From the IMG/VR virus record IMGVR_UViG_3300036770_007539, positions 1 through 64,000 of that record: 64,000 nt of DNA; one strand, written 5' to 3'. Made by a program: the position numbers and the translations under genes. The notes under the pieces are model-generated. The model was given only the letters and a program-made list of their open reading frames with translations, had not been told where the DNA came from and searched no databases. Shown here piece after piece: positions 17,842 through 63,822 of this stretch. Within the stretch, counting starts at the first letter, position 1; every line of letters begins with the position of its first letter.

Positions 17842-17891
17842 AGTTTGCTCCTATCTTAATGCGATATAGTTGATATATTTAAGGAGGTTTT

Positions 17892-24669: not shown

Positions 24670-25152
24670 ATGGAAATAGTTCAACCTACTTATGAGGCAG
24701 CATATAAGTTTTTTGATAAATATAAAAAATATAGAAATGAGTATAAAAATTCTTTTTCTTTAGCAGAAAAAAAGAAGTCATTTAATGAACATTATGGACC
24801 TGATTCTATGCCTAGTCCAAAGATGTTTGGATCAAAAGAAACAATAGCTGAAGCTGAAAATTCTATTGATAATGAAAAAAAGCATTTTACAGAATTGTTA
24901 GACTACACTGAAAATGAAGCAAAAAACGCTCTTATGGAATCAGAATGGGAATATCTTAATGAGGTGGGAGATGTTCTTGGCGAATTTGTGCTAGATGATC
25001 ATGTAAATTACGTAATATCAGAGTTTAAACAAGAATTATACCAAGATTTAGAACATAGTAGCGCAGACTCATCTTCAACAAAGATAGCAAAATTAACAAA
25101 AATAGTAAATGCATTTCACAAAAGTTGTAAAAAATTAAAAAATAGCCCTTGA
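24670..25152 (+). CDS. Hypothetical acidic protein with C-terminal helix motif
   Basis: Ends LTKIVNAFHKSCKKL. Confidence 0.65.
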   Translation: MEIVQPTYEAAYKFFDKYKKYRNEYKNSFSLAEKKKSFNEHYGPDSMPSPKMFGSKETIAEAENSIDNEKKHFTELLDYTENEAKNALMESEWEYLNEVGDVLGEFVLDDHVNYVISEFKQELYQDLEHSSADSSSTKIAKLTKIVNAFHKSCKKLKNSP

Positions 25153-25176
25153 CATTTAATGTCAGAGCGTTATACT
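25149..25176 (+). promoter_or_regulatory. Sigma70 promoter with palindrome over the -35 element
   Basis: TTGACA-N16-TATACT; TGACATT-t-AATGTCA dyad. Confidence 0.75.
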
Positions 25177-25202
25177 TCTCTCAGGTTGAGAGGAGCGCCT
25201 TC

Positions 25203-25769
25203 ATGACTTTTGATATTGAAAAAGCAAGCCCAACGCTTACTAGTTGGATGTTTAACGTAAAGCCTCATCTCAAGGCTTTATCAACAGAGCAAATTAGAGA
25301 GCATTGTAAGAAAAATAGCAAGCCATATGCTGTCATGATGGCTCAAATTATGGGTGATTTTAATTTTGCCTCTGTAATTCGTTCTGCCAATGCTTTTGGT
25401 GCAGAAAAAGTTTTTTATTTTGGAAAAAAGCGTTTTGACCGTCGAGGAACATGCGGAACACATCTTTATATTGATGTGCAATATCTTTCCACTCAAGAAC
25501 AAATTCAAGAATTGAAACAAGAATATACTTTTGTTGCTCTTGAAAATGTCAATCGCACACACTATCTTAGCGATTTTACTTGGAACACTGACAAAAAGCC
25601 ACTGATCATTATTGGTGAGGAAGGGACTGGTATTCCTTCTGAAGTGTTGTCTTTGTGTGATGTTCAAGTAGAAATTGAGCAATTTGGAAGCGTACCATCG
25701 GTAAATGCAGCAATTGCTGGTTCAATTGCAATGAATGATTTTGTAACTAAATATAAGAAGGGGCTTTGA
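25203..25769 (+). CDS. SpoU/TrmH-family RNA 2'-O-methyltransferase (probable start 25203)
   Basis: NFASVIRSANAFG, IIIGEEGTGI, SVNAAIAGSI SPOUT motifs; SD GAGGAG. Confidence 0.9.
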   Translation: MTFDIEKASPTLTSWMFNVKPHLKALSTEQIREHCKKNSKPYAVMMAQIMGDFNFASVIRSANAFGAEKVFYFGKKRFDRRGTCGTHLYIDVQYLSTQEQIQELKQEYTFVALENVNRTHYLSDFTWNTDKKPLIIIGEEGTGIPSEVLSLCDVQVEIEQFGSVPSVNAAIAGSIAMNDFVTKYKKGL

Positions 25770-26239: not shown

Positions 26240-27223
26240 ATGGAAGAAATAAATACAGTACTTTCAAATCTAAATCTAGATGCGCAATGCATTGATTATC
26301 AATCAACTAACTCTTCGGAGTTTTATGATATCAAACTTGGCTATAAATGCTCAGTAAAGAAATTTTCAAATTCTCTCAAAGAGCTTGAATTTAGACTAGG
26401 TTCTCATAATTCATTGTTTTTAACTTTACTGCCTAAGAGCGGTTGTGTAAGAATTCAAAATTTGAAAAATAATCTTCAGATTAAATTTGAAGATGTATAT
26501 TCCAAAAAAGAAGGGCTTCTCCCAGTAATCCTAGGCAAGGATTACTATGACAATATTATTTTTTCAGATTTTTCTAATCATCCCCATACTTTAATTTCTG
26601 GAACAACTGGATCTGGAAAAAGTATGGCTCTGCATAACATTATTTGTAATTTATTACTAAAAAATAATACAGAACTATATTTATCTGATTCTAAAGGAGT
26701 AGAATTTATTCCTTATGAACGTTTTTCTAAAATTTCAGAAATAGCTAAAACATATGATGAAAATATATATATGCTTAAAAAAATCCATTATATTATGGAG
26801 AGTAGGTTTGCAATAATGCGCTCTAAAAATCAAAATAATTTCCAAAAATTATTTGGAATCAATCCAATTGCGATTATAATTGATGAACTTTCGGATTTAT
26901 TGATTCAAGATAAAGATTCTGAATTAAAAAATATTTTACTATCCATTGCTCAAAAATCTCGAGCTGCTGGAATTTTTTTAATTGCGGCAACACAGCGTCC
27001 GTCAGTTGATATTCTATCTGGGACCATCAAAGCCAATTTCCCGGCTAGAATAGCCCTTAAAGCAGCCTCCCCAGTTGATTCCAAAGTAATCCTAGACCAG
27101 ACCGGAGCTGAAATGCTGAAAGGATATGGTGATGCAATTATTAACAATGAAAAATATCAATTTCTTAGATTTAAATTTCCACTAATTAATCATCAATCAA
27201 TAATTCAAAAAATTAAAAAATAA
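26240..27223 (+). CDS. FtsK/SpoIIIE-family ATPase domain protein (no TM segment, no gamma domain)
   Basis: HPHTLISGTTGSGKS, IIIDELSDL, AQKSRAAGIFLIAATQRPS, KANFPARIA, GAEMLKGYGD. Confidence 0.9.
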   Translation: MEEINTVLSNLNLDAQCIDYQSTNSSEFYDIKLGYKCSVKKFSNSLKELEFRLGSHNSLFLTLLPKSGCVRIQNLKNNLQIKFEDVYSKKEGLLPVILGKDYYDNIIFSDFSNHPHTLISGTTGSGKSMALHNIICNLLLKNNTELYLSDSKGVEFIPYERFSKISEIAKTYDENIYMLKKIHYIMESRFAIMRSKNQNNFQKLFGINPIAIIIDELSDLLIQDKDSELKNILLSIAQKSRAAGIFLIAATQRPSVDILSGTIKANFPARIALKAASPVDSKVILDQTGAEMLKGYGDAIINNEKYQFLRFKFPLINHQSIIQKIKK

Positions 27224-30387: not shown

Positions 30388-30412
30388 TTGATATAGTTAA
30401 TGTGATATTCGT

Positions 30413-30580: not shown

Positions 30581-31378
30581 ATGTCTACGTATCTTGATAA
30601 GATCAAAAACTGCGAGATTCTTTCCAATGATAAGCTTGTTGCTCTGTTTGCCCAATATTCTTTGACGGGTGACATTCAAGCTCGAAATAAAATCATCAAC
30701 TCTACGCTTAGGCTCGTTGTAAAAATTGCAAGCCAGTATAAGCATTATGGAAAGTTTGACGATCTCATCCAAGAAGGTAACTGTGGTCTTTTGAAGGCTA
30801 TTGACAAGTTTGATTTTACCCTTGGAGTTCCCTGGAGTAACTATTCTGCTCAGTGGATTCGAGCTTATATTCTTCGCTTCACATTTAACAATCAAACCAT
30901 GGTAAAGCGAGGAACCTCTCCCGAGGAGAGAAAGTATTACTGGAAACTTCTTCGACTGCGGTCGAAGCTGGAAGCCCAGGGCAAAGACGCCAATGCCGAG
31001 GCTTTGGCTACCGAAATGAACCTAACCAAAGAACAGGTTGAGTTCATTCTTAGCAGGTCTACGGTCGATTCTAGTCTTCAATCAATCTCCTGCAACAGTT
31101 TCGATGAAGATCCTTCTGAGGAAATTCTAGACCCCATCTCTTCAAACGCAGAAGATAATATTGTCGATGCTATGTCTAATTCTCTAATCGAAGAAAAAAT
31201 GAATCTATTTGCTGATAGCCTTACCCCTCAGAAGAGGCTAGTATTTATGAATCGCTTTATGTCTGATGAATACCAAACTTTTGCTCAGCTAGGCGAGCAA
31301 CTAGGAGTCACACGTCAGCGTGTCCAGCAAATTGAATCAGAGCTTAAGAAGCAATTTATTTCTAAAATCAAAATTTGA
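30581..31378 (+). CDS. RpoH/sigma32-like sigma factor
   Basis: LRLVVKIA, DDLIQEGNCGLLKAIDKFD, WIRAYILRF, degenerate RpoH box (GTSPEERKYYWKL), region 4.2 LGEQLGVTRQRVQQIE. Confidence 0.9.
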   Translation: MSTYLDKIKNCEILSNDKLVALFAQYSLTGDIQARNKIINSTLRLVVKIASQYKHYGKFDDLIQEGNCGLLKAIDKFDFTLGVPWSNYSAQWIRAYILRFTFNNQTMVKRGTSPEERKYYWKLLRLRSKLEAQGKDANAEALATEMNLTKEQVEFILSRSTVDSSLQSISCNSFDEDPSEEILDPISSNAEDNIVDAMSNSLIEEKMNLFADSLTPQKRLVFMNRFMSDEYQTFAQLGEQLGVTRQRVQQIESELKKQFISKIKI

Positions 31379-32351: not shown

Positions 32352-32371
32352 TTTGATATAGATATTGAAAT

Positions 32372-47761: not shown

Positions 47762-47862
47762 ATTATTGTCGATAGATATATCTGTCTGATATAGTTTAAA
47801 CGTGACTTGGGTTATTCAAGTTGCATTTCAGTTAAAATAATTTATTATAAATTGGAGAAAAT

Positions 47863-49664: not shown

Positions 49665-50411
49665 ATGGATAAAACGCTAAATATAAAATTAGATCTGGAC
49701 GTTAAATTGTTGTGTGTTAGCGATATACACGAGCATCCAGACCAATTTTTTGAAATTGTTAATAAATTTCCAATCTCAGAAAAAATGAGATTAGTTGTTT
49801 GTGGTGATATTTTTGATAAAGGATATGGCTTTTCTGCAGCAGAAAAAATTATTAATAAATTAAAATATCACATGGATCTAGGTCAAGCCTACTTTATTAA
49901 AGGCAATCATGAGCTAAAAAATATTAAAAAAAGCAGACAGGCTGGTTCACTATCTCCATTAATGAAATGGGTAGATAATCAGCCTATTTCTTTGTCTTTT
50001 ATTTATAATAATTCATCTAGATATACCGTTGTTCATGGGGGAGTTGATGGTTATATGGGATGGGATGATTTAGTTTATGATCTGAGCGTTTGTTATATTC
50101 GATACTTATCTAATAGTCATAAAAAAATGATACCCATTAAAAAAGAGCAAAAAGATGGACTTATTGTCTATACTCCAAAAGATCCGGAAAATTCTTTGTG
50201 GCATGAAGTATATGATGGTAGATTTGGTTATATTATTTCAGGTCATAATAGCAATCCTTCTGGTCCAAATTTTTATAAATATTCTTGTAATATTGATACG
50301 GGAGTATTTGACTCTGGCAAATTAACAGCTGCAATCTTTTCTTCTAAAGGGCGAGAAGAAATTTATCAAGCAATAGGGAAGGCTTATAAAGATGAGCAAG
50401 TTATTACCTGA
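49665..50411 (+). CDS. Calcineurin-like metallophosphoesterase
   Basis: SDIH, GDIFDKG, GNHE, VHGG, SGH, IDTG. Confidence 0.9.
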   Translation: MDKTLNIKLDLDVKLLCVSDIHEHPDQFFEIVNKFPISEKMRLVVCGDIFDKGYGFSAAEKIINKLKYHMDLGQAYFIKGNHELKNIKKSRQAGSLSPLMKWVDNQPISLSFIYNNSSRYTVVHGGVDGYMGWDDLVYDLSVCYIRYLSNSHKKMIPIKKEQKDGLIVYTPKDPENSLWHEVYDGRFGYIISGHNSNPSGPNFYKYSCNIDTGVFDSGKLTAAIFSSKGREEIYQAIGKAYKDEQVIT

Positions 50412-52696: not shown

Positions 52697-53059
52697 ATGA
52701 TGAGTCTTTCAAAAGAAAAGTTAATTAAATTTAAAGAGTTTTTTATGATTGAGCATGAAAAAATTGTAAAGAATTCGGCAGCAAGATCTTTGGACGAAAC
52801 AGACGTTGGAGGAGATGAAGCCGATATAGTTTCTTTAGGTCAAATTAAAAATTTGGCTGAATCTCTTTCTGCAAGAGATAAGGCTGCGCTTAATCGCATT
52901 GAAAACTCTCTAATAAAGATTGCTAAAGGTACTTTTGGTCAATGTGAAGAATGCGAAGAGCTTATTTCGGAAGCAAGATTAAAAGCAATTCCTGATTGTT
53001 CTTTTTGCATTTCTTGTGCAGAGCAATATGAATTAAATGTAAAAAGGGGAATGGCTTGA
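52697..53059 (+). CDS. dksA: DksA/TraR C4 zinc-finger protein
   Basis: GDEADI coiled-coil tip, IENSL.KI..GTFGQCEEC.E.I...RLKAIP....CISC. Confidence 0.85.
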   Translation: MMSLSKEKLIKFKEFFMIEHEKIVKNSAARSLDETDVGGDEADIVSLGQIKNLAESLSARDKAALNRIENSLIKIAKGTFGQCEECEELISEARLKAIPDCSFCISCAEQYELNVKRGMA

Positions 53060-53073
53060 GCTAGGAGCCTGTT

Positions 53074-53670
53074 ATGGACGATGAATTTCAATTGGGACCT
53101 CATAGGTTAGACGCTGAAATATATAAAAATTTATTTGAAAGCCGTTCAATTTTCCTATTAGGAGATATTCACGTTCAATCCGCTGCTAATCTAGCGGCTC
53201 AATTGTTATGGCTCAATGCAATCAAGCAAGATGAGATTACTGTTTATATCAATTCTCAAGGAGGTGATATTGATAGTGGTCTTTTTACAATTTACGATAC
53301 TATTCAATGGATAACCTCTCCAGTATCTACCGTTTGTATTGGAGAGGCTTATTCTAGTGCAGGCTACATATTAGCCTCTGGTTCTAGAGGAAAGAGATAC
53401 GCCTATCCTCATTCTAAAATTATGATTCATGGGGTACAAACTTCTGAGCTATCTGGAACTCAAGAGGAAATTGAGGCTGAAAGCAAAAGAATAAAATTAT
53501 TAAATCAATCTTTAATGGAAGTGATGGCAAGGCATTCAAAGCAATCTTTTTCCAAAGTTAAAAGAGATTTTAAAAAAGATAAATATTTTACAGCAGAAGA
53601 AGCTTTAAAATACGGTCTAATTGATGAAGTTATTGAGCCTACAAAAAAGATTCCACCTCTAAAAAGATAG
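53074..53670 (+). CDS. clpP: ATP-dependent Clp protease proteolytic subunit
   Basis: YINSQGG, CIGEAYSSA (Ser), IMIH (His), KDKYFTAEEALKYGLID (Asp). Confidence 0.9.
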   Translation: MDDEFQLGPHRLDAEIYKNLFESRSIFLLGDIHVQSAANLAAQLLWLNAIKQDEITVYINSQGGDIDSGLFTIYDTIQWITSPVSTVCIGEAYSSAGYILASGSRGKRYAYPHSKIMIHGVQTSELSGTQEEIEAESKRIKLLNQSLMEVMARHSKQSFSKVKRDFKKDKYFTAEEALKYGLIDEVIEPTKKIPPLKR

Positions 53671-53689
53671 AATATTTTGCTATAATGAC

Positions 53690-55339
53690 ATGGATAAATT
53701 AGCCAGAAAAAAATCATCCGATCCAAAGCAAGAAGCTTTGCGTCAAGAAAAACAGGATTGGAATGAGCAAACAAGTGAATTAATTAGCGAGCTTATTTCT
53801 TTAAAGCGTGGATTAAATGGAAAAGGAGACTCTTCAGAGGGGTTGCCTCCTTCTTCTATTAAAGACCCAATTCCGCCTCAAATAGGAGCTTATTTAAATG
53901 AGGTAGCCTCTAGCGCAGCCAAAGTAATAGAAGAGGCTCGCAACATTATTAACAAGCAAGAAAACTACTCTTCTTCTAGAAAAAAAAGAAGCATGTCAAA
54001 GGAAGAAGAGGAAATAATTAAATTGGCGGGATTTATTTCTGAGGCTTCGTGGGCAGGCTCTCGCCTTCTGGCTAGATATTGGACATTGAGAAATTTACCA
54101 GAAAAACAAAAAGCCTTTGTTTTGGATTTAATGTATTCATTAACAGATATTAATGATAAATTAAAAATTTTTGAAGAAAAATTAATAGAGCCCAATCAAA
54201 AAAGCTTAGCAAAAGCTTTTATAGATAGCTTGGCAGTATTATCCTTGTATAGGAATAATATTCTTAACAAAACCAATTATTTTTTAGGTAGACCTGCATT
54301 ACCAAATATTAGTCACAGTGAGAGACCAGAAAAACCAGAAAAACCAGAAAAACCAGAAAAACCAGCTCGGCAGCAAGCACTTACAGATGAATCTAAAAGA
54401 AGTGTAGAAGAAAATCTATCAGCTGCGCAGCAGAAGGAAAAGGATGAGGCAAAACAAACTTTTCTTAAAATGGATGCGGATTTGGGATATGCAGAAAGAT
54501 TAAATAAATTTACAAAAGAAATAAAAGGTAAGACAATACTAGTTTCAAAAAAAGGAACTCCTGATGATTTCAATAAAAAATTGCAAGCAATAATTGCTGA
54601 AAGAGACAAAATTAAATCAAGTATTTCTAGGCGACAACCCATGTATAATATAATTCTTTCTATTGGGTCATTTAAAAACCAATATGAGTCATTAATTAGT
54701 TATTTTATACAAGATTTTTCTATTAATGGAACCGAAGAAGACGCATGGGACTCTTTAGGCAAAGACACATCAAAAACTCCATTTAACGAAATGGAATATG
54801 AAATTGATCCTGTTTTGAATTCAACTACATTTGCTAATATTTATATGAAGCTTCCACTTTCTTCTGATGCGTTTGCTACGATTAACATGGATATTGATGA
54901 AGAAGAAGGTGCGCCAGAAAGTAATGAGTCAAATAAAAATACAGAAGATAGTCGGCAATTGAGTCTTTTCGTTAGCGATGGCTCATCTTTTGTTAAAGAC
55001 GCGGGTTTCTTCAGAAGATTTATTAGAGAAAAAATTTTACAATTTAAAACACCAACAGCAACAGAAATTGAACAAAAAAGAGCACTTCAAGCATCAAAAG
55101 ACTTGAGAGTTTCAATAGATTCTTTTTTAGATTTATTAGAAAATTCAAATACGTCTATAAATTCTATTATAGAAGAATTAAATCAATTAACTAAAAATTT
55201 TAAACTTCTTGGTTCTATTATGAGGAATCTCGGAGAATCATTTAGAATCCTATCTTGGGGAGAAGGTGTTAAAGAAATTTCAAAAGAAGAAATGACCGCC
55301 TATGATAGAGTTTTGAACTCCATACCGGATAAAATTTAA
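53690..55339 (+). CDS. Large helical hypothetical protein, possibly virion-associated
   Basis: AATATTTTGCTAT-N6-ATG; K-x-A motifs (MDKLA, IIKLAG, FVKDAG); PEK repeats. Confidence 0.65.
   Translation: MDKLARKKSSDPKQEALRQEKQDWNEQTSELISELISLKRGLNGKGDSSEGLPPSSIKDPIPPQIGAYLNEVASSAAKVIEEARNIINKQENYSSSRKKRSMSKEEEEIIKLAGFISEASWAGSRLLARYWTLRNLPEKQKAFVLDLMYSLTDINDKLKIFEEKLIEPNQKSLAKAFIDSLAVLSLYRNNILNKTNYFLGRPALPNISHSERPEKPEKPEKPEKPARQQALTDESKRSVEENLSAAQQKEKDEAKQTFLKMDADLGYAERLNKFTKEIKGKTILVSKKGTPDDFNKKLQAIIAERDKIKSSISRRQPMYNIILSIGSFKNQYESLISYFIQDFSINGTEEDAWDSLGKDTSKTPFNEMEYEIDPVLNSTTFANIYMKLPLSSDAFATINMDIDEEEGAPESNESNKNTEDSRQLSLFVSDGSSFVKDAGFFRRFIREKILQFKTPTATEIEQKRALQASKDLRVSIDSFLDLLENSNTSINSIIEELNQLTKNFKLLGSIMRNLGESFRILSWGEGVKEISKEEMTAYDRVLNSIPDKI
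54326..54365 (+). repeat. 9-bp tandem repeat (CCAGAAAAA)x4 encoding PEK
   Basis: Directly visible in the sequence. Confidence 0.9.
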
Positions 55340-55341
55340 TT

Positions 55342-55734
55342 ATGGATTTAATTATTATAGGTAAATATAAGTTCCCAGTGGAGATAGCATTATCTGCCGA
55401 GGAGCAATCTAGGGGATTAATGAATTGTTATGAGCCTAAAATTATGGCTTTTCCAGGAAAGAAATCAATTAAAAGCTTTTGGATGAAGAATACTCCTATG
55501 CCTTTGGACTTGATCTTTGCCTGCGATGGAGCTATAGTAGATCGCAAAAAGGGATCGCCTTTTTCTCTTGGAAATATTTCATCCGATTATGAATCTGACT
55601 TAATAGTAGAGTTTCCAAGAGGAGTATTAGACCATTTTCCAATTAACATTGGCGATGATATTTGCTTAAATTATTCTATAAAAACTATTGCTAAAAAATT
55701 CAATTTTACCCTAAACAAATTAGGAGATTTATGA
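55342..55734 (+). CDS. DUF192-family protein
   Basis: VEIA.S.EEQSRGLM, SFWMKNTPMPLDLIF, IVEFPRG, INIGD. Confidence 0.85.
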   Translation: MDLIIIGKYKFPVEIALSAEEQSRGLMNCYEPKIMAFPGKKSIKSFWMKNTPMPLDLIFACDGAIVDRKKGSPFSLGNISSDYESDLIVEFPRGVLDHFPINIGDDICLNYSIKTIAKKFNFTLNKLGDL

Positions 55735-55737
55735 TTT

Positions 55738-57129
55738 ATGGATGTCATTCAAGAAATTTCTCAAAATGCCGACAATTTATCTGAAAAAGATTTATCTTGG
55801 ATAATTCCCAAAATAAATGATAAATATAATTATGTTATAAAAAATTTCTCTGTTGCCGCCAAACAGAATAATGAGATCTCCAAGGCAGCTTTTCAAGCTG
55901 CCGCACACCAGGCTTTAGAGAAAGCAATTAACACTTTTCTTTTTAAAAAGCAGCACTGGAAGAAAAAATATAATTTACATTATTATCTTATTAAGACTTT
56001 ATCAAATTTAAAATCAGAAAAATTAATTGAAAATTCAGGAACGGAAAATGTTAATCTGCCTATCTGCCCGCTTTGCAAGAGCGAGGGATATAAAGAATTT
56101 TTAGAGAGCAATGATAATTTTTATCATTGTAAAAGATGCTCTAACCTTCTTGAAAATATGGAGCATTCAAATCTTAAATATGAATTAAGAAAAATATTTA
56201 GCAGTCACTCTAAAAAAGGAGTTAGATGCCCGGACTGTAAAGGTTGGGCTCCAGATTCTGCATTTGACGGTGGAATCTTTCCCTGTCTATATAATTGTGG
56301 TTTTATTGGAAATTATAATGAATATTATTCAGGAGCACATCCTGTATCTTTAACTTTTCGAAAAATTAAATCATTGAATGAAAATCTTGACGATGATTTT
56401 TCTTTAGAAAAAGTTTTAAACTCCTCGTCAATTACAGAACAAGAAGAACTAATCTTCAATGAAGATCTTGAAAATCAATATAAGTTAGTCAAAGAAGTAT
56501 TATTTCAACAACAAAAATCTCTTAATAATACCGCTACATCTGCCACTATTATTCAAAAGCAATTAATGTACCAAGCATTCATTAATTGCTTAGAGATGTT
56601 TCCATATGAAATGACTCTCTATTTGGCTCATCAAAAAAATGTTTCTAAAGAACCTCTCCAATGTAAAATATTTCAAGAATATGCAGATTTAATGTTAAAC
56701 TATATGCCATTTAGTATTGTTAAAGGAAAAAATAAATTTGAAATTTTAGATCCTTGCGATCCCAAAGCTTCTTTGTTTCTTGGAATTTCTGAATATTCTT
56801 CTGTGGTTAGCAGAGATGGCTGCATCCCGAATGAGACTAAAGAAAATTATATTGGCGGTAAACAGGTTAAAGATTATGGTCCCTGTTTTCTTGGTAAATT
56901 AATTTCTGTTACGTCAGATGGTATAGATGTTACAGAATCTGTTAAATATTATACTTTTAATGAAATTAAAACTTCCCTACCTGAAAACACGGAAGTTGAA
57001 GTAAAACACTTTAGAATCGCTTCCCATTACGAAATGCACTCTTTGGTCTTTCTTCAAAGAATTCGAAGGTCTGTAGTGGATAAGGTTTATTTTGTCTTAA
57101 ATAAAGAAAAAAGAAAGGTTAGATCATGA
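55738..57129 (+). CDS. Zinc-ribbon protein with sigma70-like region 2 and 3 segments (candidate phage sigma factor)
   Basis: AFQAAAHQALEKAINTF...YYL (region 2-like); CPLC/CKRC/CPDC/CLYNC; IKSLNENLDDDFSLEKVL...EEL (region 3.2-like). Confidence 0.4.
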   Translation: MDVIQEISQNADNLSEKDLSWIIPKINDKYNYVIKNFSVAAKQNNEISKAAFQAAAHQALEKAINTFLFKKQHWKKKYNLHYYLIKTLSNLKSEKLIENSGTENVNLPICPLCKSEGYKEFLESNDNFYHCKRCSNLLENMEHSNLKYELRKIFSSHSKKGVRCPDCKGWAPDSAFDGGIFPCLYNCGFIGNYNEYYSGAHPVSLTFRKIKSLNENLDDDFSLEKVLNSSSITEQEELIFNEDLENQYKLVKEVLFQQQKSLNNTATSATIIQKQLMYQAFINCLEMFPYEMTLYLAHQKNVSKEPLQCKIFQEYADLMLNYMPFSIVKGKNKFEILDPCDPKASLFLGISEYSSVVSRDGCIPNETKENYIGGKQVKDYGPCFLGKLISVTSDGIDVTESVKYYTFNEIKTSLPENTEVEVKHFRIASHYEMHSLVFLQRIRRSVVDKVYFVLNKEKRKVRS

Positions 57130-57559
57130 AAAATTTTGATTTAAATGAATTATTAAGTTCTTCTATGAAGAACATGGCTGCTAATTATAAAACAGAGGCT
57201 CCAACTTGGTTTATGCCAGGTCAGCTTTCTTTTAATGCATCAGAAAGCTTATCTCTTTTTCATTGTTTAGAATCTCAGATGATTCAGTTTGCCATTTTTC
57301 ATGGAAAAACTGTGCATAGATTTTATATTTATTTACCAGAAGATAAATACGAATTATCTAATTTAGATGACGTAGTTAAAGTTATTAATGCTGAAGAAAA
57401 ATCTTTGAAGCTTGTATATAGAGGAGAATCTTGTTTATTGTTCATCTCCCAAGATAATATGTTATTTTTTGATTCAAATCTAGATAAAATTGAAGTAGCT
57501 TCTTTTACTGGTACAAAATTAGCCTCTTTAAAAAACAATTTAAAATCTTTGAGTAAAAA

Positions 57560-58390
57560 ATGAGTAAGTGGAGACCTTCCGACAATTGCATTTATGTCAT
57601 ACCAGACATTCACGGCGCCGTTGATTTGTTAGAAAAGTGTTTAGTTAGAATTTTGCCACTAAGAAATAAGAATGGAAAAAAAGATAAAATAATTTTTTTA
57701 GGAGATTATATAGACCGGCACGAAGATTCTTGCTTGGTTATTGATGTTTTAATTGAATTAAAGAAAAAATACCCAGACCAAGTAATATGTTTAAAGGGAA
57801 ATCATGAACATATGCTATTGATGGGTTTAGAAATGTATCCTAATTATTTACCATTTGAATACTCTTCACAGTGGAAGATGTGGCTGCATAATGGTGGTGA
57901 CGATACTCTTAGAGGATATTTAAAAAATAATAAAAACAATTTAATGTTATCAAGTGTAAATTCTCTGGCAGTTAGAAAATTTAATATTATTCCTGATGAG
58001 CACTTAGAGTTTATGATGAACTGTCTTGATTTTTATGAAACAGAAAACTTTTCTTTTATTCATGGAGGTGGAAATCCGCAACTGCCATGGAGCAAGCACT
58101 CTCCGGAAGTTATTTATTGGGACAGGAAACTTTTTGAATTCGTTAAGCATTCAATGGCGTATAACGAGCCTGTCCCATGGAATAAAACTATAATAACCGG
58201 TCATAATGGACCGGTTCCACTATTTCATGATAAATTTATGATGCTTGATGCGGGAAGCCCTAAAAGACTTTTAATTTTAGAAGCTAATTCAAGGGAAGCA
58301 TTTATAGCAGAAAATGACAAATCAAAATTATTAAAATTTTCTACTTCCAATAGCATTGTAAAAAGAAGCCCTTTTCGCAGAAACTCTTAG
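57560..58390 (+). CDS. Ser/Thr protein phosphatase-like metallophosphoesterase
   Basis: PDIHG, GDYIDR, GNHE, WLHNGG, IHGG, TGH, LDAG. Confidence 0.9.
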   Translation: MSKWRPSDNCIYVIPDIHGAVDLLEKCLVRILPLRNKNGKKDKIIFLGDYIDRHEDSCLVIDVLIELKKKYPDQVICLKGNHEHMLLMGLEMYPNYLPFEYSSQWKMWLHNGGDDTLRGYLKNNKNNLMLSSVNSLAVRKFNIIPDEHLEFMMNCLDFYETENFSFIHGGGNPQLPWSKHSPEVIYWDRKLFEFVKHSMAYNEPVPWNKTIITGHNGPVPLFHDKFMMLDAGSPKRLLILEANSREAFIAENDKSKLLKFSTSNSIVKRSPFRRNS

Positions 58391-58753
58391 GTCTTTTACT
58401 ACTGAGGGATAAAGATCGGCAAGCTCTTCAAATAATTTCCATTGCTTCTTAAGTAAAATATAGCAAGAATAGTAAGAGTTTTGAGCTAAAGCATTGTAAT
58501 ATTTGTCTTCAGCTCCTTTTAGATGCCCAGGCATATAAACTTGGCAAAATAAAATCCAATCTCCCAATGATTGATATAAATGAAAATTATAATTATTTTG
58601 AGCTTCAATATATTTTAAAGTTAAACTATTATTAGAATAATTTTCTAGTTTGTTAGAATTTATTAATAGATTTAATAGATAAGAATTCAACTCATTGCTA
58701 TAAGCAAGTTTGTCGATCGTTGGCTTGAAATATTTCATTAATATTTCATCCAT
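58331..58753 (-). CDS. Hypothetical helical protein
   Basis: YQSLGDWILF...YY...Y...LFEELAD pattern; exact start uncertain. Confidence 0.55.
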   Translation of the reverse strand: MDEILMKYFKPTIDKLAYSNELNSYLLNLLINSNKLENYSNNSLTLKYIEAQNNYNFHLYQSLGDWILFCQVYMPGHLKGAEDKYYNALAQNSYYSCYILLKKQWKLFEELADLYPSVVKDLRVSAKRASFYNAIGSRKF

Positions 58754-58777
58754 ATAATAATATAGGAAAAAATTCAT

Positions 58778-60742
58778 ATGTCCAGCATACTTCTAATTGT
58801 AGAATCTCCAACAAAAGCAAAAACTCTTTCTAAATATTTAGGAAAAGAATATAAAATACTTTCTAGTTTTGGTCACATGTTTGACTTGGATACTAAAAAA
58901 GCAATGTGGGGAATTGATGTTAAAAATAATTTTGAAACTTATTATTCTTTGTTGCAAGACAAGAAGAATCAATTAGAAAATATTAATAAAGCTGCTAAAG
59001 AAGCCGATCTAATATTATTAGCCTCCGACCCTGATCGAGAGGGGGAGGCAATTTCTTGGCACCTGTCAGAAGAATTAAAAAAATTTAAAAAACCAATTAA
59101 AAGAGTCTTATTTAAAGAATATACTAAAAAAGCAATTCTTGAATCTATTAAATCATCTAGAGAGTTGGATGAACAGCTTTACAATGCACAGCAAGCAAGA
59201 AGAGTTATTGATCGAATTGTTGGATTTGGTGTTTCTGGCTATCTTAGAAAAGTTGAAGATTCTAAGACTTCTTTGTCGGCAGGGAGAACTCAATCTGTTG
59301 CCCTTAAATTAATTGTAGAAAGAGAAAAAGAGATAGAAGAATTTAAACCAGAAACTTATTATACGGTCACAGCTTCGGGTACAAAAGATAAAATTGAATT
59401 TGAAATTAAATACTCTGACAAGATTACAAATTCTAAAAAAGCTGAAAAAGTTTTAGAATCTTTAAAATCTGGTGTTAAAGTTTCAAAATTAGACAAATCT
59501 CAAAAAAATAAAAGCCCACTTCCACCTTTTGACACAGCTTCTTTGATGGGTACGTCTTCATCTATGCTTGGCTTTGGCAGTGCCAAGACTATGCAGCTAG
59601 CTCAAGCATTGTATGAAAAGGGTATGATTACTTACATGAGGACTGACTCTTTTAGAGTTTCTTCGGAATCAATCACCCAGGCTAGAGATTATTTGTCTGC
59701 TCAGCATTATGCATTACCTACCAAGCCTAATTTATATGGCGCATCTGCCGAGGCTCAAGATGCACACGAAGCAATTAGACCAACAGATATAAACGCCACT
59801 CCAGATGTATCTAATCTTCCTCAAGATGAAGAAAAATTATATGATTTAATTTGGAAAAGATTTCTAGCTTCCCAATTGAAGCCTGCTATTTATGATGCTA
59901 CCGTTGTAACATTTAAATCTTCAGACGGTACTGAATTTAAATCTCATGGAAGGATATTAACATCCGAAGGATGGCTATCTCTTTTTAAAGACACAGAGGA
60001 TAAATCATCAGATAGTATACTTCCAAGTTTAGAAGTTGGAGACTGCCCAAAACTTAAAAATGAAAAATTTACAGAAAAACAAACCAAACCACCTTCCAGA
60101 TATTCTGAAAAGGCAATTCTAGAAGAACTTAAAAAAAGAGGAATTGGTCGACCCAGTACTTATTCAGCTATAGTTTCTAAAATCCAAGAAAGAAATTATG
60201 TTGAAAATAAAGGAAAGGTTCTAGCTCCAACTTCGCTTGGGTTTGAAGTTTTCAATCATTTAAATTCAAAATTTAGCTTCATGAACTATGATTATACTGC
60301 CAGTATGGAGCAGTCTTTGGATAAAATTGAATCGGGCTCATTATCTTATGTTGATTTTTTAAATAATTTTTATAAAGATTTTTCTATAGAATTAGTTAAA
60401 ACAGAAAAAGAAATTAATAAATCAGCAATAGATAAATGCCCTAAATGCAGCTCTGATAATAAAGAATATATATTTGGCTCAACTCATTATGTATATTGTA
60501 GTACATTTCCAAAATGTGGATATAAATCGAGTTATTCTAAGCAAAATACTGATATAGTAGCTAGTGAAGATAAATTTACTGCGTTTCAAAGTTGCCCAAA
60601 ATGTAGTGGGTATCTGAGAGCGTACCACTCAAACAGTCAGTGGTCACTTTCATGTGTAAGGAAAGAATGTGATGGTAAATTATCTCCAACAGAAAAACAA
60701 GTAAATTTCTATAATAATTTATTAAAATTTAAGAAAGGTTAA
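58778..60742 (+). CDS. topA: DNA topoisomerase I (type IA)
   Basis: IVESPTKAKT, SDPDREGEAI, SAGRTQS, ITYMRTDS, DAHEAIRPT, GIGRPSTY, C-terminal Zn ribbons. Confidence 0.95.
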   Translation: MSSILLIVESPTKAKTLSKYLGKEYKILSSFGHMFDLDTKKAMWGIDVKNNFETYYSLLQDKKNQLENINKAAKEADLILLASDPDREGEAISWHLSEELKKFKKPIKRVLFKEYTKKAILESIKSSRELDEQLYNAQQARRVIDRIVGFGVSGYLRKVEDSKTSLSAGRTQSVALKLIVEREKEIEEFKPETYYTVTASGTKDKIEFEIKYSDKITNSKKAEKVLESLKSGVKVSKLDKSQKNKSPLPPFDTASLMGTSSSMLGFGSAKTMQLAQALYEKGMITYMRTDSFRVSSESITQARDYLSAQHYALPTKPNLYGASAEAQDAHEAIRPTDINATPDVSNLPQDEEKLYDLIWKRFLASQLKPAIYDATVVTFKSSDGTEFKSHGRILTSEGWLSLFKDTEDKSSDSILPSLEVGDCPKLKNEKFTEKQTKPPSRYSEKAILEELKKRGIGRPSTYSAIVSKIQERNYVENKGKVLAPTSLGFEVFNHLNSKFSFMNYDYTASMEQSLDKIESGSLSYVDFLNNFYKDFSIELVKTEKEINKSAIDKCPKCSSDNKEYIFGSTHYVYCSTFPKCGYKSSYSKQNTDIVASEDKFTAFQSCPKCSGYLRAYHSNSQWSLSCVRKECDGKLSPTEKQVNFYNNLLKFKKG

Positions 60743-60752
60743 GGGTACGATT

Positions 60753-61088
60753 ATGGCAGCTCCAGGAGACCTCCTTCATTTTAGAGGATTAGAAGTTAAA
60801 GTTCACGATAATGATTTTGAAGATGCTTTCAGAAAATTTAAATCATTAGTTCAAAAAGAAAAAATCATTTCAGAATATAAAGAAAAACAAAGATATGAAA
60901 AACCTTCTGATAAAAAAAGAAGAAAGCATCGAGAAGCAATACAAAAACTTATGCTAGCTAAATTACGAGAACAGCAAGTTTTAAGTGGAGAGTGGGATAA
61001 AATTCAAGCTAGAAAAGAAGCTCGCAAAAGTAAAAAGATGGAAGAGCGCAAACGAAAAACATCAGATGGCTCCAGCGAGTCCCAATGA
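60753..61088 (+). CDS. rpsU: Ribosomal protein bS21 with C-terminal extension
   Basis: VKVHDNDFEDAFRKFK..V..E.II.EYK....YEKPSDKKRRK. Confidence 0.85.
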   Translation: MAAPGDLLHFRGLEVKVHDNDFEDAFRKFKSLVQKEKIISEYKEKQRYEKPSDKKRRKHREAIQKLMLAKLREQQVLSGEWDKIQARKEARKSKKMEERKRKTSDGSSESQ

Positions 61089-62635: not shown

Positions 62636-63325
62636 ATGAATAAATATAATATAATTTGTATTGATTGTCCCTGGAGCTTTTCTGATAAGCTAGAGATGTC
62701 AGACGTAGCTCGCAGCTCTGAATCTCAATATCCAGTATTAAATATTGAAGAATTAAAAAAATTAAGAATTAATGACATAGCAGCAGAAGATGCTTTAATA
62801 GTATCATGGACGCCATCTTCTTTATTACAAGAGGGGCTAGACTGCTTAAAAAGTTGGAATTTTAGACAGACCCAAATGGTCGTTTGGAATAAAACAAATA
62901 AAGATCCTTTTAAAAGTATTAAAAATAAGTTGAAGAAAATAGATTTAAACGATAAATCTAATATTGATAAAATTTTTAATGATTTTAATTACAATGATTT
63001 AATGGGATTTGGGATGGGTAGGATGTGGAGGAATTGTCATGAAATTGCTCTAGTAGGCGTTAGAGGTAAAATTTATAAGCACTTAAAAAACAAATCTCAA
63101 AGAACTGTTCATTTTGGAATTAATGAAAAACATTCTAAGAAACCAGAACATATCCAAGATCAATTAGATTTAATGTTTCCAGATCCATCTCTAAAAAAGA
63201 TAGAGGTTTTTGCAAGAAGATTAAAAGAAGGTTGGACATGTATTGGAAATGAAGTATGCTCTGGCAAAGATATACGAGAATCTATAAATGAACTATTATT
63301 TGATAAGGTTTGCGATAGCATATGA
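62636..63325 (+). CDS. MT-A70-family adenine methyltransferase
   Basis: YNIICIDCPW (DPPW-like), GMGRMWRNCHEIAL.G.RG, HSKKP, IEVFARR...GW...GNE. Confidence 0.88.
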   Translation: MNKYNIICIDCPWSFSDKLEMSDVARSSESQYPVLNIEELKKLRINDIAAEDALIVSWTPSSLLQEGLDCLKSWNFRQTQMVVWNKTNKDPFKSIKNKLKKIDLNDKSNIDKIFNDFNYNDLMGFGMGRMWRNCHEIALVGVRGKIYKHLKNKSQRTVHFGINEKHSKKPEHIQDQLDLMFPDPSLKKIEVFARRLKEGWTCIGNEVCSGKDIRESINELLFDKVCDSI

Positions 63326-63822
63326 ATGCTTTGTTGTTAAGTTATTCATATGAGCCAATTTCTTTTATTTCCGAAAGAAAAGCATTAAAAATGCTTTGTT
63401 TGGGAAAAATTGAAATTTTATCTTCATGGGAAGATCAAACTATCATTTCTAATAACAAATTAAATTATCCATCAGTGGTTAGATTGGTTTATAAAAATAG
63501 ATGGATGCCAAAAATTGCAAAATTTAATAGAAAAGCAATCTTAAAAAGAGATTATTATATTTGTCAATATTGTGGATATGCAGGGACTTCAGCTCAATTA
63601 AGCATAGATCACATTGTTCCACGTTCTTGTGGAGGTCCCAACTCTTTTGATAATTGTGTAACTTCTTGTCACCCGTGTAATTCAAGAAAAAAAAATAGAA
63701 CACCAGAGCAAGCAGGAATGAAATTATTAAATAAGCCAGAGGCTCCTAAACGTTTTATTGTAAACGAATATAGGAGCCTCTCTATTGTGCATCCAGATTG
63801 GAAATTTTATTTAGGAGCCTAA
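63322..63822 (+). CDS. HNH endonuclease (McrA-like)
   Basis: RDYYICQYCG, SIDHIVPRSCGG, NCVTSCHPCNSRK. Confidence 0.9.
   Translation: MNALLLSYSYEPISFISERKALKMLCLGKIEILSSWEDQTIISNNKLNYPSVVRLVYKNRWMPKIAKFNRKAILKRDYYICQYCGYAGTSAQLSIDHIVPRSCGGPNSFDNCVTSCHPCNSRKKNRTPEQAGMKLLNKPEAPKRFIVNEYRSLSIVHPDWKFYLGA

What the first reader, a model, noticed from the sequence alone, without database searches (positions are those of the whole stretch)
55738..57129. Candidate zinc-ribbon-inserted sigma factor lacking region 4
Seen: an N-terminal segment (AAFQAAAHQALEKAINTF...YNLHYYLIKTL) resembles sigma70 region 2 (DLxQExxxGLxKAxxxF...FxxY). A later segment (IKSLNENLDDDFSLEKVL...EEL..E..E....V...L) resembles region 3.2 and the following linker. 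Four CxxC-type pairs (two zinc ribbons) lie between them, and the C-terminus shows no region 4 HTH. Established: T4 gp55 lacks region 4 and reads a single element. Inference: this may be an unusual late sigma factor for the single-element promoter above. It lies near other expression genes (DksA, HU, ClpP, TopA, bS21).
Basis: inference. Interest (0 to 1): 0.75.

Follow-up and report, generated by a model that had tools for sequence, protein, structure and literature searches.

The report
Sigma-like headed zinc-ribbon megaphage protein
A real, strongly conserved gene of a group of giant bacterial viruses encodes a four-part protein whose small N-terminal head looks like the core-binding domain of a sigma factor. 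Its only universally conserved part is a large, completely uncharacterised C-terminal module, so it is probably a new RNA-polymerase- or DNA-associated adaptor rather than a true sigma factor.

Summary
The ORF at 55738-57129 (+, 463 aa) is real. It belongs to a metagenome-only family of about 258 clusters (at 50% identity) found on 260-460 kb phage contigs.

Its parts are:
- a sigma-domain-2-like helical head (residues 1-102);
- two invariant Cys4 zinc ribbons (104-204);
- an acidic, length-variable linker (205-233);
- a 230-aa C-terminal module (helical bundle with an inserted beta barrel and a basic tail) with no known relative.

The sigma2 likeness holds at fold level: at least 27 of the 50 best PDB matches are sigma2 domains, at Z 7-8.8. 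No test reaches family-membership level, and no region 4 is detectable.

The head is the least conserved part and is dispensable. Relatives occur as ribbons + C-module (about 320 aa) or C-module alone (214-217 aa), always in the same syntenic block. In about half of the related loci examined the gene sits directly after a stand-alone FtsK/SpoIIIE-like ATPase gene and is often translationally coupled to it.

The phage also has a canonical sigma70 and a divergent 213-aa sigma. The "single-element" motif TGATATAG reads as an extended -10.

The best reading is a novel adaptor whose sigma2-like head and ribbons were added in one lineage. Function is unproven.

The parts
55738..57129 (+). Whole gene, 463 aa (P0001). 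Member of a metagenome-only megaphage protein family.
   Evidence: ORF list. 96 full-length homologues at 31-75% identity. 258 clusters at 50% identity. AF2 model with pLDDT 90.8.
55738..56043 (+). Residues 1-102: four-helix head with a sigma-domain-2-like fold. Conserved motif T66-F-L-F-K..H73-W74..R78..Y83-L84.
   Evidence: VIA-align: at least 27 of the top 50 PDB matches are sigma2 domains, Z 6.2-8.8. hhalign against a sigma2 profile: P=0.0025 in register, with Y83 aligned to sigma70 Y430. PLM neighbours include viral Sigma70_r2 clusters at score 0.92. Scattered weak sigma hits in NCBIfam and Pfam. Column conservation.
56047..56163 (+). Residues 104-142: zinc ribbon 1 (C110, C113, C131, C134).
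   Evidence: The four Cys are invariant in 66 sequences. Beta-hairpin ribbon in the model. Only sub-significant profile hits to ribbons of Pol IV NRPD1, RpoM/TFS, L37Ae and TFIIE-alpha.
56164..56349 (+). Residues 143-204: connecting helix plus zinc ribbon 2 (C164, C167, C183, C187), ending in the invariant H201-P202.
   Evidence: Invariant columns. Model secondary structure.
56350..56436 (+). Residues 205-233: acidic, poorly conserved flexible linker.
   Evidence: pLDDT 57-73. Length 18-40 aa and median pI 4.6 across the family. Gappy alignment columns.
56437..57126 (+). Residues 234-463: family-defining C-terminal module. Helices 234-322 plus the C-terminal helix 435-455 form a bundle, with a beta barrel (325-430) inserted and a basic tail. 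Invariant residues: P324, G349, S351, N365, T367, E369, G373, G386, F407, H424, H430, Y431.
   Evidence: Alignment A3. Domain model with pLDDT 92.9 and pTM 0.88. No fold relative above noise in PDB, AFDB, BFVD or ESM Atlas except the family member A0A6J5RLU9. The module occurs as a stand-alone protein in L124 and L125. Charge profile.
26240..27223 (+). Stand-alone FtsK/SpoIIIE-like motor ATPase (327 aa). Its orthologue lies directly upstream of the target gene in about half of the related loci examined.
   Evidence: Pfam FtsK_SpoIIIE at 1.6e-27. phrog_1358 at 9e-70. Synteny and overlapping stop/start codons in L012, L023, L024, L062-64, L124 and L125.
30581..31378 (+). Canonical sigma70-family gene of the phage (regions 2, 3 and 4), preceded by a TTGACA-N17-TATGTT promoter-like site.
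   Evidence: Pfam r2 at 7e-11 and r4 at 3e-10. Intergenic sequence.
52697..55734 (+). Conserved upstream block: DksA-like (52697-53059), ClpP (53074-53670), a 549-aa unknown protein (53690-55339) and DUF192 (55342-55734). DUF192 ends 3 nt before the target's start codon.
   Evidence: Pfam hits. Synteny in 18 viral loci.
57126..61088 (+). Downstream block: a 145-aa ORF overlapping the target's stop codon (57126-57563), a NinI-like phosphatase (57560-58390), TopA (58778-60742) and bS21 (60753-61088).
   Evidence: and synteny.
30389..30396 (+). Example of the single-element motif TGATATAG (extended -10-like), 24 nt before tRNA-Gln. Other window copies are at 32354 (before tRNA-Ser), 47787 and 17871.
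   Evidence: 9 of the 16 genomic copies lie in the 4.9% of the genome that is intergenic. tRNA positions.

Best explanation
The gene encodes a modular accessory protein of a megaphage lineage, not a bona fide sigma factor.

**What is shown**
- The functional core is the 230-aa C-terminal module: an acidic helical bundle with an inserted beta barrel and a basic C-terminal helix/tail. It is present in every family member.
- In about half of the related loci examined, the gene follows a stand-alone FtsK/SpoIIIE-like motor ATPase gene and is often translationally coupled to it.
- The four-part anatomy, the fold likeness of the head, the architecture series among relatives and the synteny are all observed.

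**What is inferred**
- The core probably works as a protein-interaction partner or adaptor of that ATPase, or of another component of this conserved DksA-ClpP-...-TopA block.
- In the sub-lineage to which this window belongs, two Cys4 zinc ribbons and then a sigma-domain-2-derived four-helix head were added at the N-terminus, joined to the core by a flexible acidic linker.
- The most likely role of these additions is to dock the core onto host RNA polymerase (the beta' clamp surface that sigma2 uses) and/or onto nucleic acid. That would make the long form a sigma-like, RNA-polymerase-associated adaptor or regulator.
- The partnership with the ATPase and any RNA polymerase docking are untested inference.
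For: **Gene and family**
- Real, full-length-conserved family on contigs up to about 470 kb.

**Domain anatomy**
- Two high-confidence models.

**Sigma2-like head: several independent but individually weak lines**
- At least 27 of the top 50 VIA matches are sigma2 domains, Z up to 8.8, including chain 7d7d_F of the T4 late complex.
- hhalign P=0.0025 in the correct register, against 0.55 for the reversed control.
- PLM neighbours include viral Sigma70_r2 clusters at score 0.92.
- Recurrent sub-threshold sigma models in NCBIfam and Pfam.

**The C-module is the core**
- It is the best conserved part.
- Relatives lack the head (about 320 aa, L062-65), lack head and ribbons (214-217 aa, L124 and L125), or lack the ribbons (P0189).
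- BFVD contains a stand-alone 211-aa member.

**ATPase link**
- The ATPase is directly upstream in 10 of 16 distant viral loci and in all six short-form or C-only loci (L062-65, L124, L125). Start and stop codons overlap or abut in L012, L023, L024, L062-64, L124 and L125.
- The ATPase is also present in our genome at 26 kb and in G008.

**Other support**
- The C-module body is acidic and the tail is basic.
- A DksA-like RNA polymerase secondary-channel factor lies in the same block.
- The sigma role is already covered by two recognisable sigma genes.
Against: - No direct evidence of any interaction. The beta' (1-420) + head/ribbons complex prediction returned "no answer".
- Gene order is conserved across the whole lineage, so adjacency to the ATPase may reflect inherited synteny rather than function.
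- The ATPase is 30-50 kb away in this phage and in G008.
- No fusion proteins link the C-module to the ATPase or to anything else.
- Z scores of 7-9 for a helical bundle are in the range where a common arrangement alone can give matches (note).
- The sigma2 sequence signal is below any accepted threshold.
- The C-module's function is completely unknown.
Confidence: 0.4

Rival explanations
1. First reader's reading. This is an unusual late sigma factor without region 4, like T4 gp55. It binds host core RNA polymerase through its sigma2-like head and directs it to the single-element TGATATAG-type promoters. The ribbons and C-module replace sigma3 and sigma4.
For: - Sigma2-like fold of residues 1-102, including a match to a chain of the T4 late-transcription complex.
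- In-register weak profile alignment, with invariant Y83 at the position of sigma70 Y430.
- PLM neighbours are viral sigma clusters for the whole protein. For the C part they are small viral Sigma70_r4 proteins, score <=0.85, a lead only.
- An acidic flexible linker follows the head and ribbons, as in ECF sigma factors.
- A genuine intergenic single-element motif exists in this genome.
Against: - The head is the least conserved part and is absent in natural relatives that keep the rest.
- The positions equivalent to W433/W434 are not conserved.
- It fails sigma70 r2 and r4 family models and the gp55 profile.
- The phage has a canonical sigma, plus a lineage-wide divergent sigma that matches both sigma2 and sigma4 profiles (prob 93-98%).
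- The motif looks like an extended -10, which is readable by ordinary sigma70-type factors.
- The motif is hardly enriched in relatives that carry the gene.
- The docking prediction gave no answer.
Confidence: 0.12
2. It is a DNA-transaction factor with no RNA polymerase role. The C-module is a regulatory or targeting subunit of the FtsK/SpoIIIE-like double-stranded-DNA translocase, for example for genome internalisation, concatemer resolution or segregation, or host-DNA handling alongside TopA and HU. The ribbons and helical head are nucleic-acid- or protein-binding additions, and their likeness to sigma2 is an exapted or convergent four-helix arrangement.
For: - Tight, often translationally coupled adjacency to the ATPase in the most divergent and minimal architectures.
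- Neighbours are TopA and HU.
- Zinc ribbons are common DNA/RNA-binding modules.
- The sigma2 signal is sub-threshold in all sequence tests.
- Z values lie within the range seen for unrelated helical bundles.
Against: - More than 25 distinct sigma2 structures outrank every other fold for the head.
- Independent weak sequence and PLM signals agree on sigma.
- The C-module body is acidic, so it is not an obvious DNA binder.
- The ATPase is not adjacent in this phage.
- No fusion evidence.
Confidence: 0.3
3. It is a virion (neck or head-to-tail adaptor-like) structural protein, because the beta barrel of the C-module resembles the barrels of phage adaptor and tube proteins.
For: Residues about 346-430 align to neck, adaptor and tube proteins of phages 812, phicrAss001, DT57C and GP4 (Z 6.6-7.7, about 63-69 residues, rmsd about 2 A). 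Atlas and BFVD searches also return adaptor and tube families.
Against: - The matches cover only a small, common barrel. TM is below 0.35 and E values are not significant.
- The gene lies in a non-structural block (DksA, ClpP, TopA, phosphatase, bS21) in every relative.
- Cytoplasmic-type Cys4 ribbons and a sigma2-like head are not features of neck proteins.
Confidence: 0.05

Closest known systems
Sigma70-family domain sigma2 (ECF-type and others: ShbA, SigI6, AlgU, SigW, SigK, RpoS region 2, sigmaE)
   Same: Residues 1-102 have the same four-helix arrangement (Z 7-8.8, rmsd about 3 A). The hydrophobic register of regions 2.1, 2.2 and 2.3 is kept: F52, L60, A63, I64 and F67 align with sigma70 I405, L412, A415, V416 and F419. 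The consensus E54 aligns with E407, and invariant Y83 with Y430.
   Different: - Below all family thresholds.
- An 8-residue conserved insertion (FKxxHWxx) lies between regions 2.2 and 2.3.
- No W433/W434 equivalents.
- No sigma3 or sigma4.
- The head is dispensable within the family.
- It is followed by two zinc ribbons and an unrelated 230-aa module.
Phage T4 gp55 (late sigma, sigma2-only) with gp33 and the gp45 sliding clamp
   Same: Both are phage-encoded sigma2-like domains without region 4. There is a structural match to chain 7d7d_F of the T4 late complex (Z 7.8, 18% identity). That the chain is gp55 is my inference from its length. Both could in principle work with a DNA-tracking ring.
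   Different: - No sequence-profile similarity to the gp55 family (P=0.1, out of register).
- 463 aa against 185 aa.
- It carries zinc ribbons and a large C-module.
- The possible ring partner would be an FtsK-like hexameric motor, not a sliding clamp.
- Nothing here has been tested experimentally.
TFIIE-like and other stand-alone zinc-ribbon proteins of jumbo phages (Iyer et al. 2021, PMC7824862)
   Same: Cys4 ribbons in phages that depend on host RNA polymerase, role unknown. There are weak profile hits of ribbon 1 to TFIIE-alpha, TFS/RpoM and the Pol IV clamp ribbon.
   Different: All hits are sub-significant (E 0.007-0.5). Here two ribbons are embedded between a sigma2-like head and a novel module.
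Uncharacterised protein A0A6J5RLU9 (uncultured Caudovirales phage, 211 aa)
   Same: It has the same C-module fold (TM 0.83-0.91, 31% identity, E 8e-21). It is a family member with the minimal architecture.
   Different: It lacks the head, ribbons and linker, and has no annotation.
FtsK/SpoIIIE translocases with their gamma (sequence-reading) domain
   Same: The phage ATPase is an FtsK-type motor. A separately encoded partner could supply the targeting function that the gamma domain supplies in FtsK (inference).
   Different: The C-module is not a winged helix and shows no similarity to gamma domains. The partnership is inferred from gene order only.

Membership tests
Sigma70-family sigma factor | Region 2 recognised by family profiles (Pfam PF04542, NCBIfam sigma models) at or above the curated cut-off. 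| tested here: not met
   - No hit for P0001.
- 2 of 52 members hit at E=0.03.
- Scattered NCBIfam sigma hits at E 0.005-0.07 in single members.
- hhalign against a 29-sigma profile gives P=0.0025, prob 12%.
Sigma70-family sigma factor | Sigma2 three-dimensional fold. | tested here: met
   At least 27 of the 50 best PDB cluster representatives are sigma2 domains (Z 6.2-8.8, 74-108 residues aligned, rmsd 2.4-3.7 A for most) on a model with pLDDT above 90. Caveat: Z is below the level that excludes a common helical arrangement.
Sigma70-family sigma factor | Conserved -10-melting aromatic residues of region 2.3 (sigma70 Y430, W433, W434). | tested here: inconclusive
   Y83 is invariant and aligns with Y430. 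The positions aligned with W433/W434 are variable (K/T/C/S). The alignment itself is weak.
Sigma70-family sigma factor | Region 4 helix-turn-helix (-35 recognition and beta-flap binding). | tested here: not met
   - No Pfam r4 hit.
- hhalign of the C-terminal helices against a sigma4 profile gives P about 0.5, while the positive control gives 8.8e-13.
- No sigma4 among the fold matches.
- The only support is a PLM lead at score <=0.85.
Sigma70-family sigma factor | Sigma2 is the conserved, indispensable core of the protein family. | tested here: not met
   The head is the least conserved part. It is absent in the roughly 320-aa and 214-217-aa natural forms.
Sigma70-family sigma factor | Binds the RNA polymerase beta' clamp helices and confers promoter-specific initiation. 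| tested here: inconclusive
   Complex prediction with E. coli beta' 1-420 gave a score of 0.01, verdict "no answer". Biochemistry is not testable here.
T4 gp55-type late sigma | Sequence-profile similarity to the gp55 family. | tested here: not met
   hhalign of the head against a 24-sequence gp55 alignment gives P=0.1, out of register. gp55 against the sigma2 profile gives P=8.9e-5.
T4 gp55-type late sigma | Small sigma2-only protein acting with gp33-like and sliding-clamp partners. | not tested
   The architecture differs (463 aa with ribbons and a C-module). Partners were not searched for.
Cys4 zinc-ribbon domains (TFIIE/TFS/L37Ae-like) | Two CxxC-type knuckles on beta hairpins, all four Cys conserved. 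| tested here: met
   There are two such units, with all 8 Cys invariant in 66 sequences and ribbon hairpins in the model. Assignment to a specific ribbon family is inconclusive (E 0.007-0.5).
Megaphage C-module family (unnamed; includes A0A6J5RLU9) | A 230-aa helical bundle with inserted beta barrel, carrying the invariant N-x-T-x-E, H-x-R-x3-H-Y and G-x-S motifs. | tested here: met
   Alignment A3, model with pTM 0.88, BFVD match with TM 0.83-0.91.

The most novel reading that the evidence does not exclude
The protein could be the hub of a new kind of phage late-transcription device, analogous to T4 gp55/gp33/gp45 but built from different parts. The sigma2-like head would bind the RNA polymerase clamp. 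The C-module would bind the hexameric FtsK-like motor, which tracks along phage DNA as a "mobile enhancer". Initiation at single-element (extended -10-like) promoters would then be coupled to DNA translocation. In the short forms, the C-module alone would bridge the motor to a separately encoded sigma.
Probability: 0.08. Interest if true: 0.9.

Novelty: new variant of a known kind. Interest (0 to 1): 0.55.

Why it matters
Megaphages of 300-460 kb rely on host RNA polymerase, and how they reprogram it is almost unknown. This family is conserved across a whole lineage of such phages.

If the head docks on RNA polymerase:
- It would be the first example of a sigma2 domain recruited as a tether for a non-sigma effector.
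- It would link transcription to an FtsK-type DNA motor.

If it does not:
- The family still defines a new, highly conserved partner module of phage FtsK-like ATPases, with a fold that has no characterised relative.

Either result gives a direct experimental handle on giant-phage gene expression or DNA handling.

Tried and rejected
**Family and profile searches on the whole protein**
- Pfam, PHROGs and NCBIfam gave only zinc-ribbon noise.
- tblastn against 50,697 GenBank phages gave no match.
- HMM searches of the whole protein, head, ribbons and C-module against PDB sequences gave nothing significant.

**Fold searches**
- Foldseek of the whole model against PDB and AFDB clusters gave nothing.
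- Fold searches of the C-module against PDB (two aligners), AFDB clusters, ESM Atlas and BFVD returned only a family member, plus weak hits to adaptor barrels and generic bundles.

**Tests of the sigma hypotheses**
- A cryptic sigma4 in helices 271-322 was suggested by the PLM search. I rejected it at profile level.
- Specific kinship to gp55 was rejected.
- Docking on E. coli beta' 1-420 returned "no answer", which is not evidence either way.

**Tests of alternative gene arrangements**
- A split-off head gene upstream of the short form in L065 was rejected.
- The 207-aa ORF after our ATPase is not a paralogue of the C-module.
- The downstream 145-aa ORF is not clearly conserved in distant loci.
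- No Rosetta-stone fusions of the C-module with the ATPase or other domains were found.

**Context**
- Host inference stayed unresolved. The phage sigma gave only two uninformative bacterial loci. Shine-Dalgarno use of 48% argues weakly against a Bacteroidota-type host.
- No RNA sequencing run was listed for the locus.
- The consensus promoter and terminator scan around the gene was not above the shuffled background.
- Gene-motif co-occurrence could only be tested on 10-21 kb flanks and is inconclusive.
Full report
**1. What is there**

The ORF at 55738-57129 (+) encodes 463 aa. The window is the first 64 kb of a 301-kb IMG/VR viral record estimated to be 71% complete. The DNA comes from subsurface metagenomes, and no RNA run is listed.

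The protein has no Pfam, PHROG or NCBIfam family beyond zinc-ribbon noise. It has no match in GenBank phages. It does have 96 full-length homologues at 31-75% identity in metagenomes and 258 clusters at 50% identity. Eighteen IMG/VR loci carry it, many on contigs of 260-459 kb. It is therefore a real, conserved gene of a megaphage lineage.

**2. Anatomy**

A 52-sequence alignment (A1) and an AlphaFold2 model (mean pLDDT 90.8) give four parts:
- Residues 1-102 form a four-helix head.
- Residues 104-204 form two zinc ribbons with eight invariant Cys (C110/113/131/134 and C164/167/183/187), followed by the invariant H201-P202.
- Residues 205-233 form a low-confidence, acidic linker whose length varies from 18 to 40 aa across the family.
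- Residues 234-463 form a compact module (modelled alone: pLDDT 92.9, pTM 0.88). Helices 234-322 and the C-terminal helix 435-455 make a bundle, a beta barrel (325-430) is inserted, and a strongly basic tail follows (net +7).

The C-module is the best-conserved part. Distant members are 38-49% identical to the query in the C-module and 20-36% in the head. It carries many invariant polar residues (S351, N365, T367, E369, H424, H430, Y431).

**3. Is the head sigma2-like?**

*Fold level: yes.* A Foldseek-independent scan of 48,161 PDB cluster representatives returns sigma2 domains as at least 27 of the 50 best matches. These include ShbA, SigB, SigI6, AlgU, SigW, SigK, RpoS region 2, BldN, CnrH, sigmaE, sigma28, pro-sigmaK, WhiG and sigma70. 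Chain 7d7d_F of the T4 late complex also appears; it is probably gp55, which is my inference from its length. Z is 6.2-8.8 and rmsd about 3 A over 74-108 residues. The tool warns that Z below about 13 can arise from common helical arrangements. The dominance of one family over all other folds is still striking.

*Sequence level: only weak, but concordant.* I built a sigma2 profile from 27 sigma genes of one bacterial genome plus two canonical phage sigmas.
- hhalign of the head against this profile gives P=0.0025 (prob 12%) over 67-83 columns.
- The reversed-sequence control gives 0.55.
- The lineage's divergent sigma gives 3.9e-7, and the T4 gp55 family gives 8.9e-5.

The family motif A-F-x-E...L..A.xTF aligns with region 2.2, and invariant Y83 aligns with sigma70 Y430. 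The W433/W434 positions are not conserved, and an 8-residue conserved insertion (FKxxHWxx) is present.

Per-member scans add further weak signals. Sigma70_r2 appears in 2 of 52 members at E=0.03. Seven weak NCBIfam sigma models appear among 46 families hit. A protein-language-model search places the protein next to viral Sigma70_r2 clusters (score 0.92, 15 of 100 hits).

I conclude that the head is probably a remote sigma2 derivative (about 70%). It does not pass any membership threshold, and it is not specifically gp55-like (P=0.1).

**4. Region 4 and the C-module**

No region 4 is detectable:
- no Pfam hit;
- hhalign against a sigma4 profile gives P about 0.5, with a positive control of 8.8e-13;
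- no sigma4 appears among the fold matches.

The language-model search of residues 232-463 lists small viral Sigma70_r4 proteins at score <=0.85, which the tool rates as a lead only.

The C-module has no convincing relative in PDB, AFDB clusters, ESM Atlas or BFVD. The one exception is a 211-aa uncharacterised phage protein, A0A6J5RLU9 (TM 0.83-0.91), which is simply a minimal family member. Its barrel weakly resembles phage adaptor and tube barrels (Z about 7 over about 65 residues). The bundle resembles generic bundles.

**5. The decisive comparative result**

The family occurs in a series of architectures:
- head + 2 ribbons + C-module (460-530 aa);
- divergent head + ribbons + C-module (about 400 aa);
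- ribbons + C-module (305-340 aa, starting a few residues before the first CPxC);
- head + C-module without ribbons (P0189);
- C-module alone (214-217 aa).

The short forms are genuine. In L062-64, L124 and L125 the gene starts within a few nucleotides of the stop codon of the preceding gene, or overlaps it, which leaves no room for a missing N-terminus. The small ORFs upstream of the short form in L065 are not a detached head.

All forms sit in the same syntenic block: HU, x, DksA, ClpP, a 390-690-aa unknown protein, DUF192, [FtsK/SpoIIIE-like ATPase], target..., phosphatase, TopA, bS21. The ATPase is a motor-only protein (327 aa; Pfam 1.6e-27; phrog_1358 9e-70). It lies directly upstream of the target in 10 of 16 distant viral loci and in all the short-form and C-only loci (L062-65, L124, L125). 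In this phage it lies at 26240-27223, and in G008 it is about 50 kb away.

In a sigma factor, sigma2 is the indispensable core. Here it is a dispensable addition to another core.

**6. Other sigma genes and the promoter motif**

The phage has a canonical sigma70-family gene (30581-31378, with r2 and r4 above cut-off). It also has a divergent 213-aa sigma at about 211 kb. Orthologues of the latter occur in all five related megaphage genomes tested, and they match sigma2 and sigma4 profiles with 93-98% probability. No RNA polymerase beta gene was found.

Intergenic DNA shows two promoter-like classes:
- TTGACA-N17-TATGyT, for example upstream of the sigma gene;
- the single-element (T)TGATATAG(T/A)T, of which 9 of 16 copies lie in the 4.9% of the genome that is intergenic, for example just upstream of two tRNA genes.

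The second class reads as an extended -10 (TGnTATAnT). By established knowledge of sigma70 regions 2.4 and 3.0, ordinary sigma70-type factors can use such elements. In the flanks of related loci the motif is only weakly enriched (0.19 against 0.07 per kb). No gene-motif link is therefore shown.

**7. Direct test of docking**

A complex prediction of residues 1-204 with E. coli beta' 1-420 scored 0.01. The verdict was "no answer", which is neither support nor evidence against. The host is unknown. Shine-Dalgarno-like motifs precede 48% of ORFs.

**8. Interpretation**

The best-supported reading (confidence about 0.4) is a modular adaptor. Its universal C-module acts with the FtsK-like ATPase or another member of the conserved block. 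In this sub-lineage it acquired zinc ribbons and a sigma2-derived head that most plausibly docks on RNA polymerase or nucleic acid.

Rival readings:
- a purely DNA-transaction role, with the sigma2 likeness exapted or convergent (0.3);
- a structural protein (0.05).

The most novel reading not excluded (0.08) is a T4-like "mobile enhancer" device in which the FtsK-type ring replaces the sliding clamp.

Literature searches found no description of this family. Iyer et al. 2021 (PMC7824862) note only TFIIE-like zinc-ribbon proteins of unknown role in jumbo phages that use host RNA polymerase.

**9. Verdict**

The functional claim (a late sigma for the single-element promoter) is not supported, and the comparative architecture data argue against it. 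The object is a new, conserved, multi-domain megaphage protein family with an unexplained core module, and it merits experimental follow-up.

Noticed in passing
window 26240-27223 (+): A stand-alone FtsK/SpoIIIE-type motor ATPase (327 aa) with no membrane or gamma domains, which is unusual for a tailed phage with terminase packaging. Its orthologue is the usual upstream neighbour of the target gene in related megaphages.
   Followed up: partly
window approx. 2520, 8300, 18150, 20525, 22800, 30520, 34850, 48600 (+): A class of two-element promoter-like sites (TTGACA-N17-TATGyT/TATTnT) in intergenic regions. One lies upstream of the phage's canonical sigma gene. They are probably early promoters read by the host.
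   Followed up: partly
window 30389-30396, 32354-32361, 47787-47794, 17871-17877 (+): The single-element motif (T)TGATATAG(T/A)T is extended -10-like. Genome-wide, 9 of 16 copies are intergenic. Two copies sit 18-24 nt upstream of the tRNA-Gln and tRNA-Ser genes.
   Followed up: partly
genome G000 approx. 211.2-211.8 kb (outside the window): A divergent 213-aa sigma-like gene with a weak region 2 and a clear region 4 by profile-profile comparison. It is conserved in all five related megaphage genomes tested, and is a more parsimonious candidate for a phage-specific (middle or late) sigma.
   Followed up: partly
window 53690-55339 (+): A 549-aa ORF with a PEKPEKPEKPEKP repeat and no family. It is syntenic between ClpP and DUF192 in all relatives. 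In L124 the gene at this position carries an AAA domain, so it may be a ClpX-like unfoldase partner of the phage ClpP.
   Followed up: no
window 49665-50411 and 57560-58390 (+): Two calcineurin-like (Metallophos) phosphoesterases. The second is NinI-like (phrog_246, E=5e-38) and is conserved near the target gene in many relatives.
   Followed up: no
window 60753-61088 (+): A phage-encoded ribosomal protein bS21 directly after TopA, with a long basic C-terminal extension. bS21 phages in the literature (PMC9723584) are mostly predicted to infect Bacteroidota. This genome uses Shine-Dalgarno-like sites before about 48% of its ORFs.
   Followed up: partly
window 62636-63822 and 25149-25769 (+): An MT-A70-type methyltransferase followed by an HNH endonuclease, and a SpoU-type RNA methylase next to the ATPase region.
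   Followed up: no
L125 (ENA contig_12386), whole locus: TopA, DUF192 and the ATPase are split or truncated in this assembly, which suggests frameshift errors. The C-module-only architecture is better supported by L124, where the neighbouring genes are intact.
   Followed up: yes
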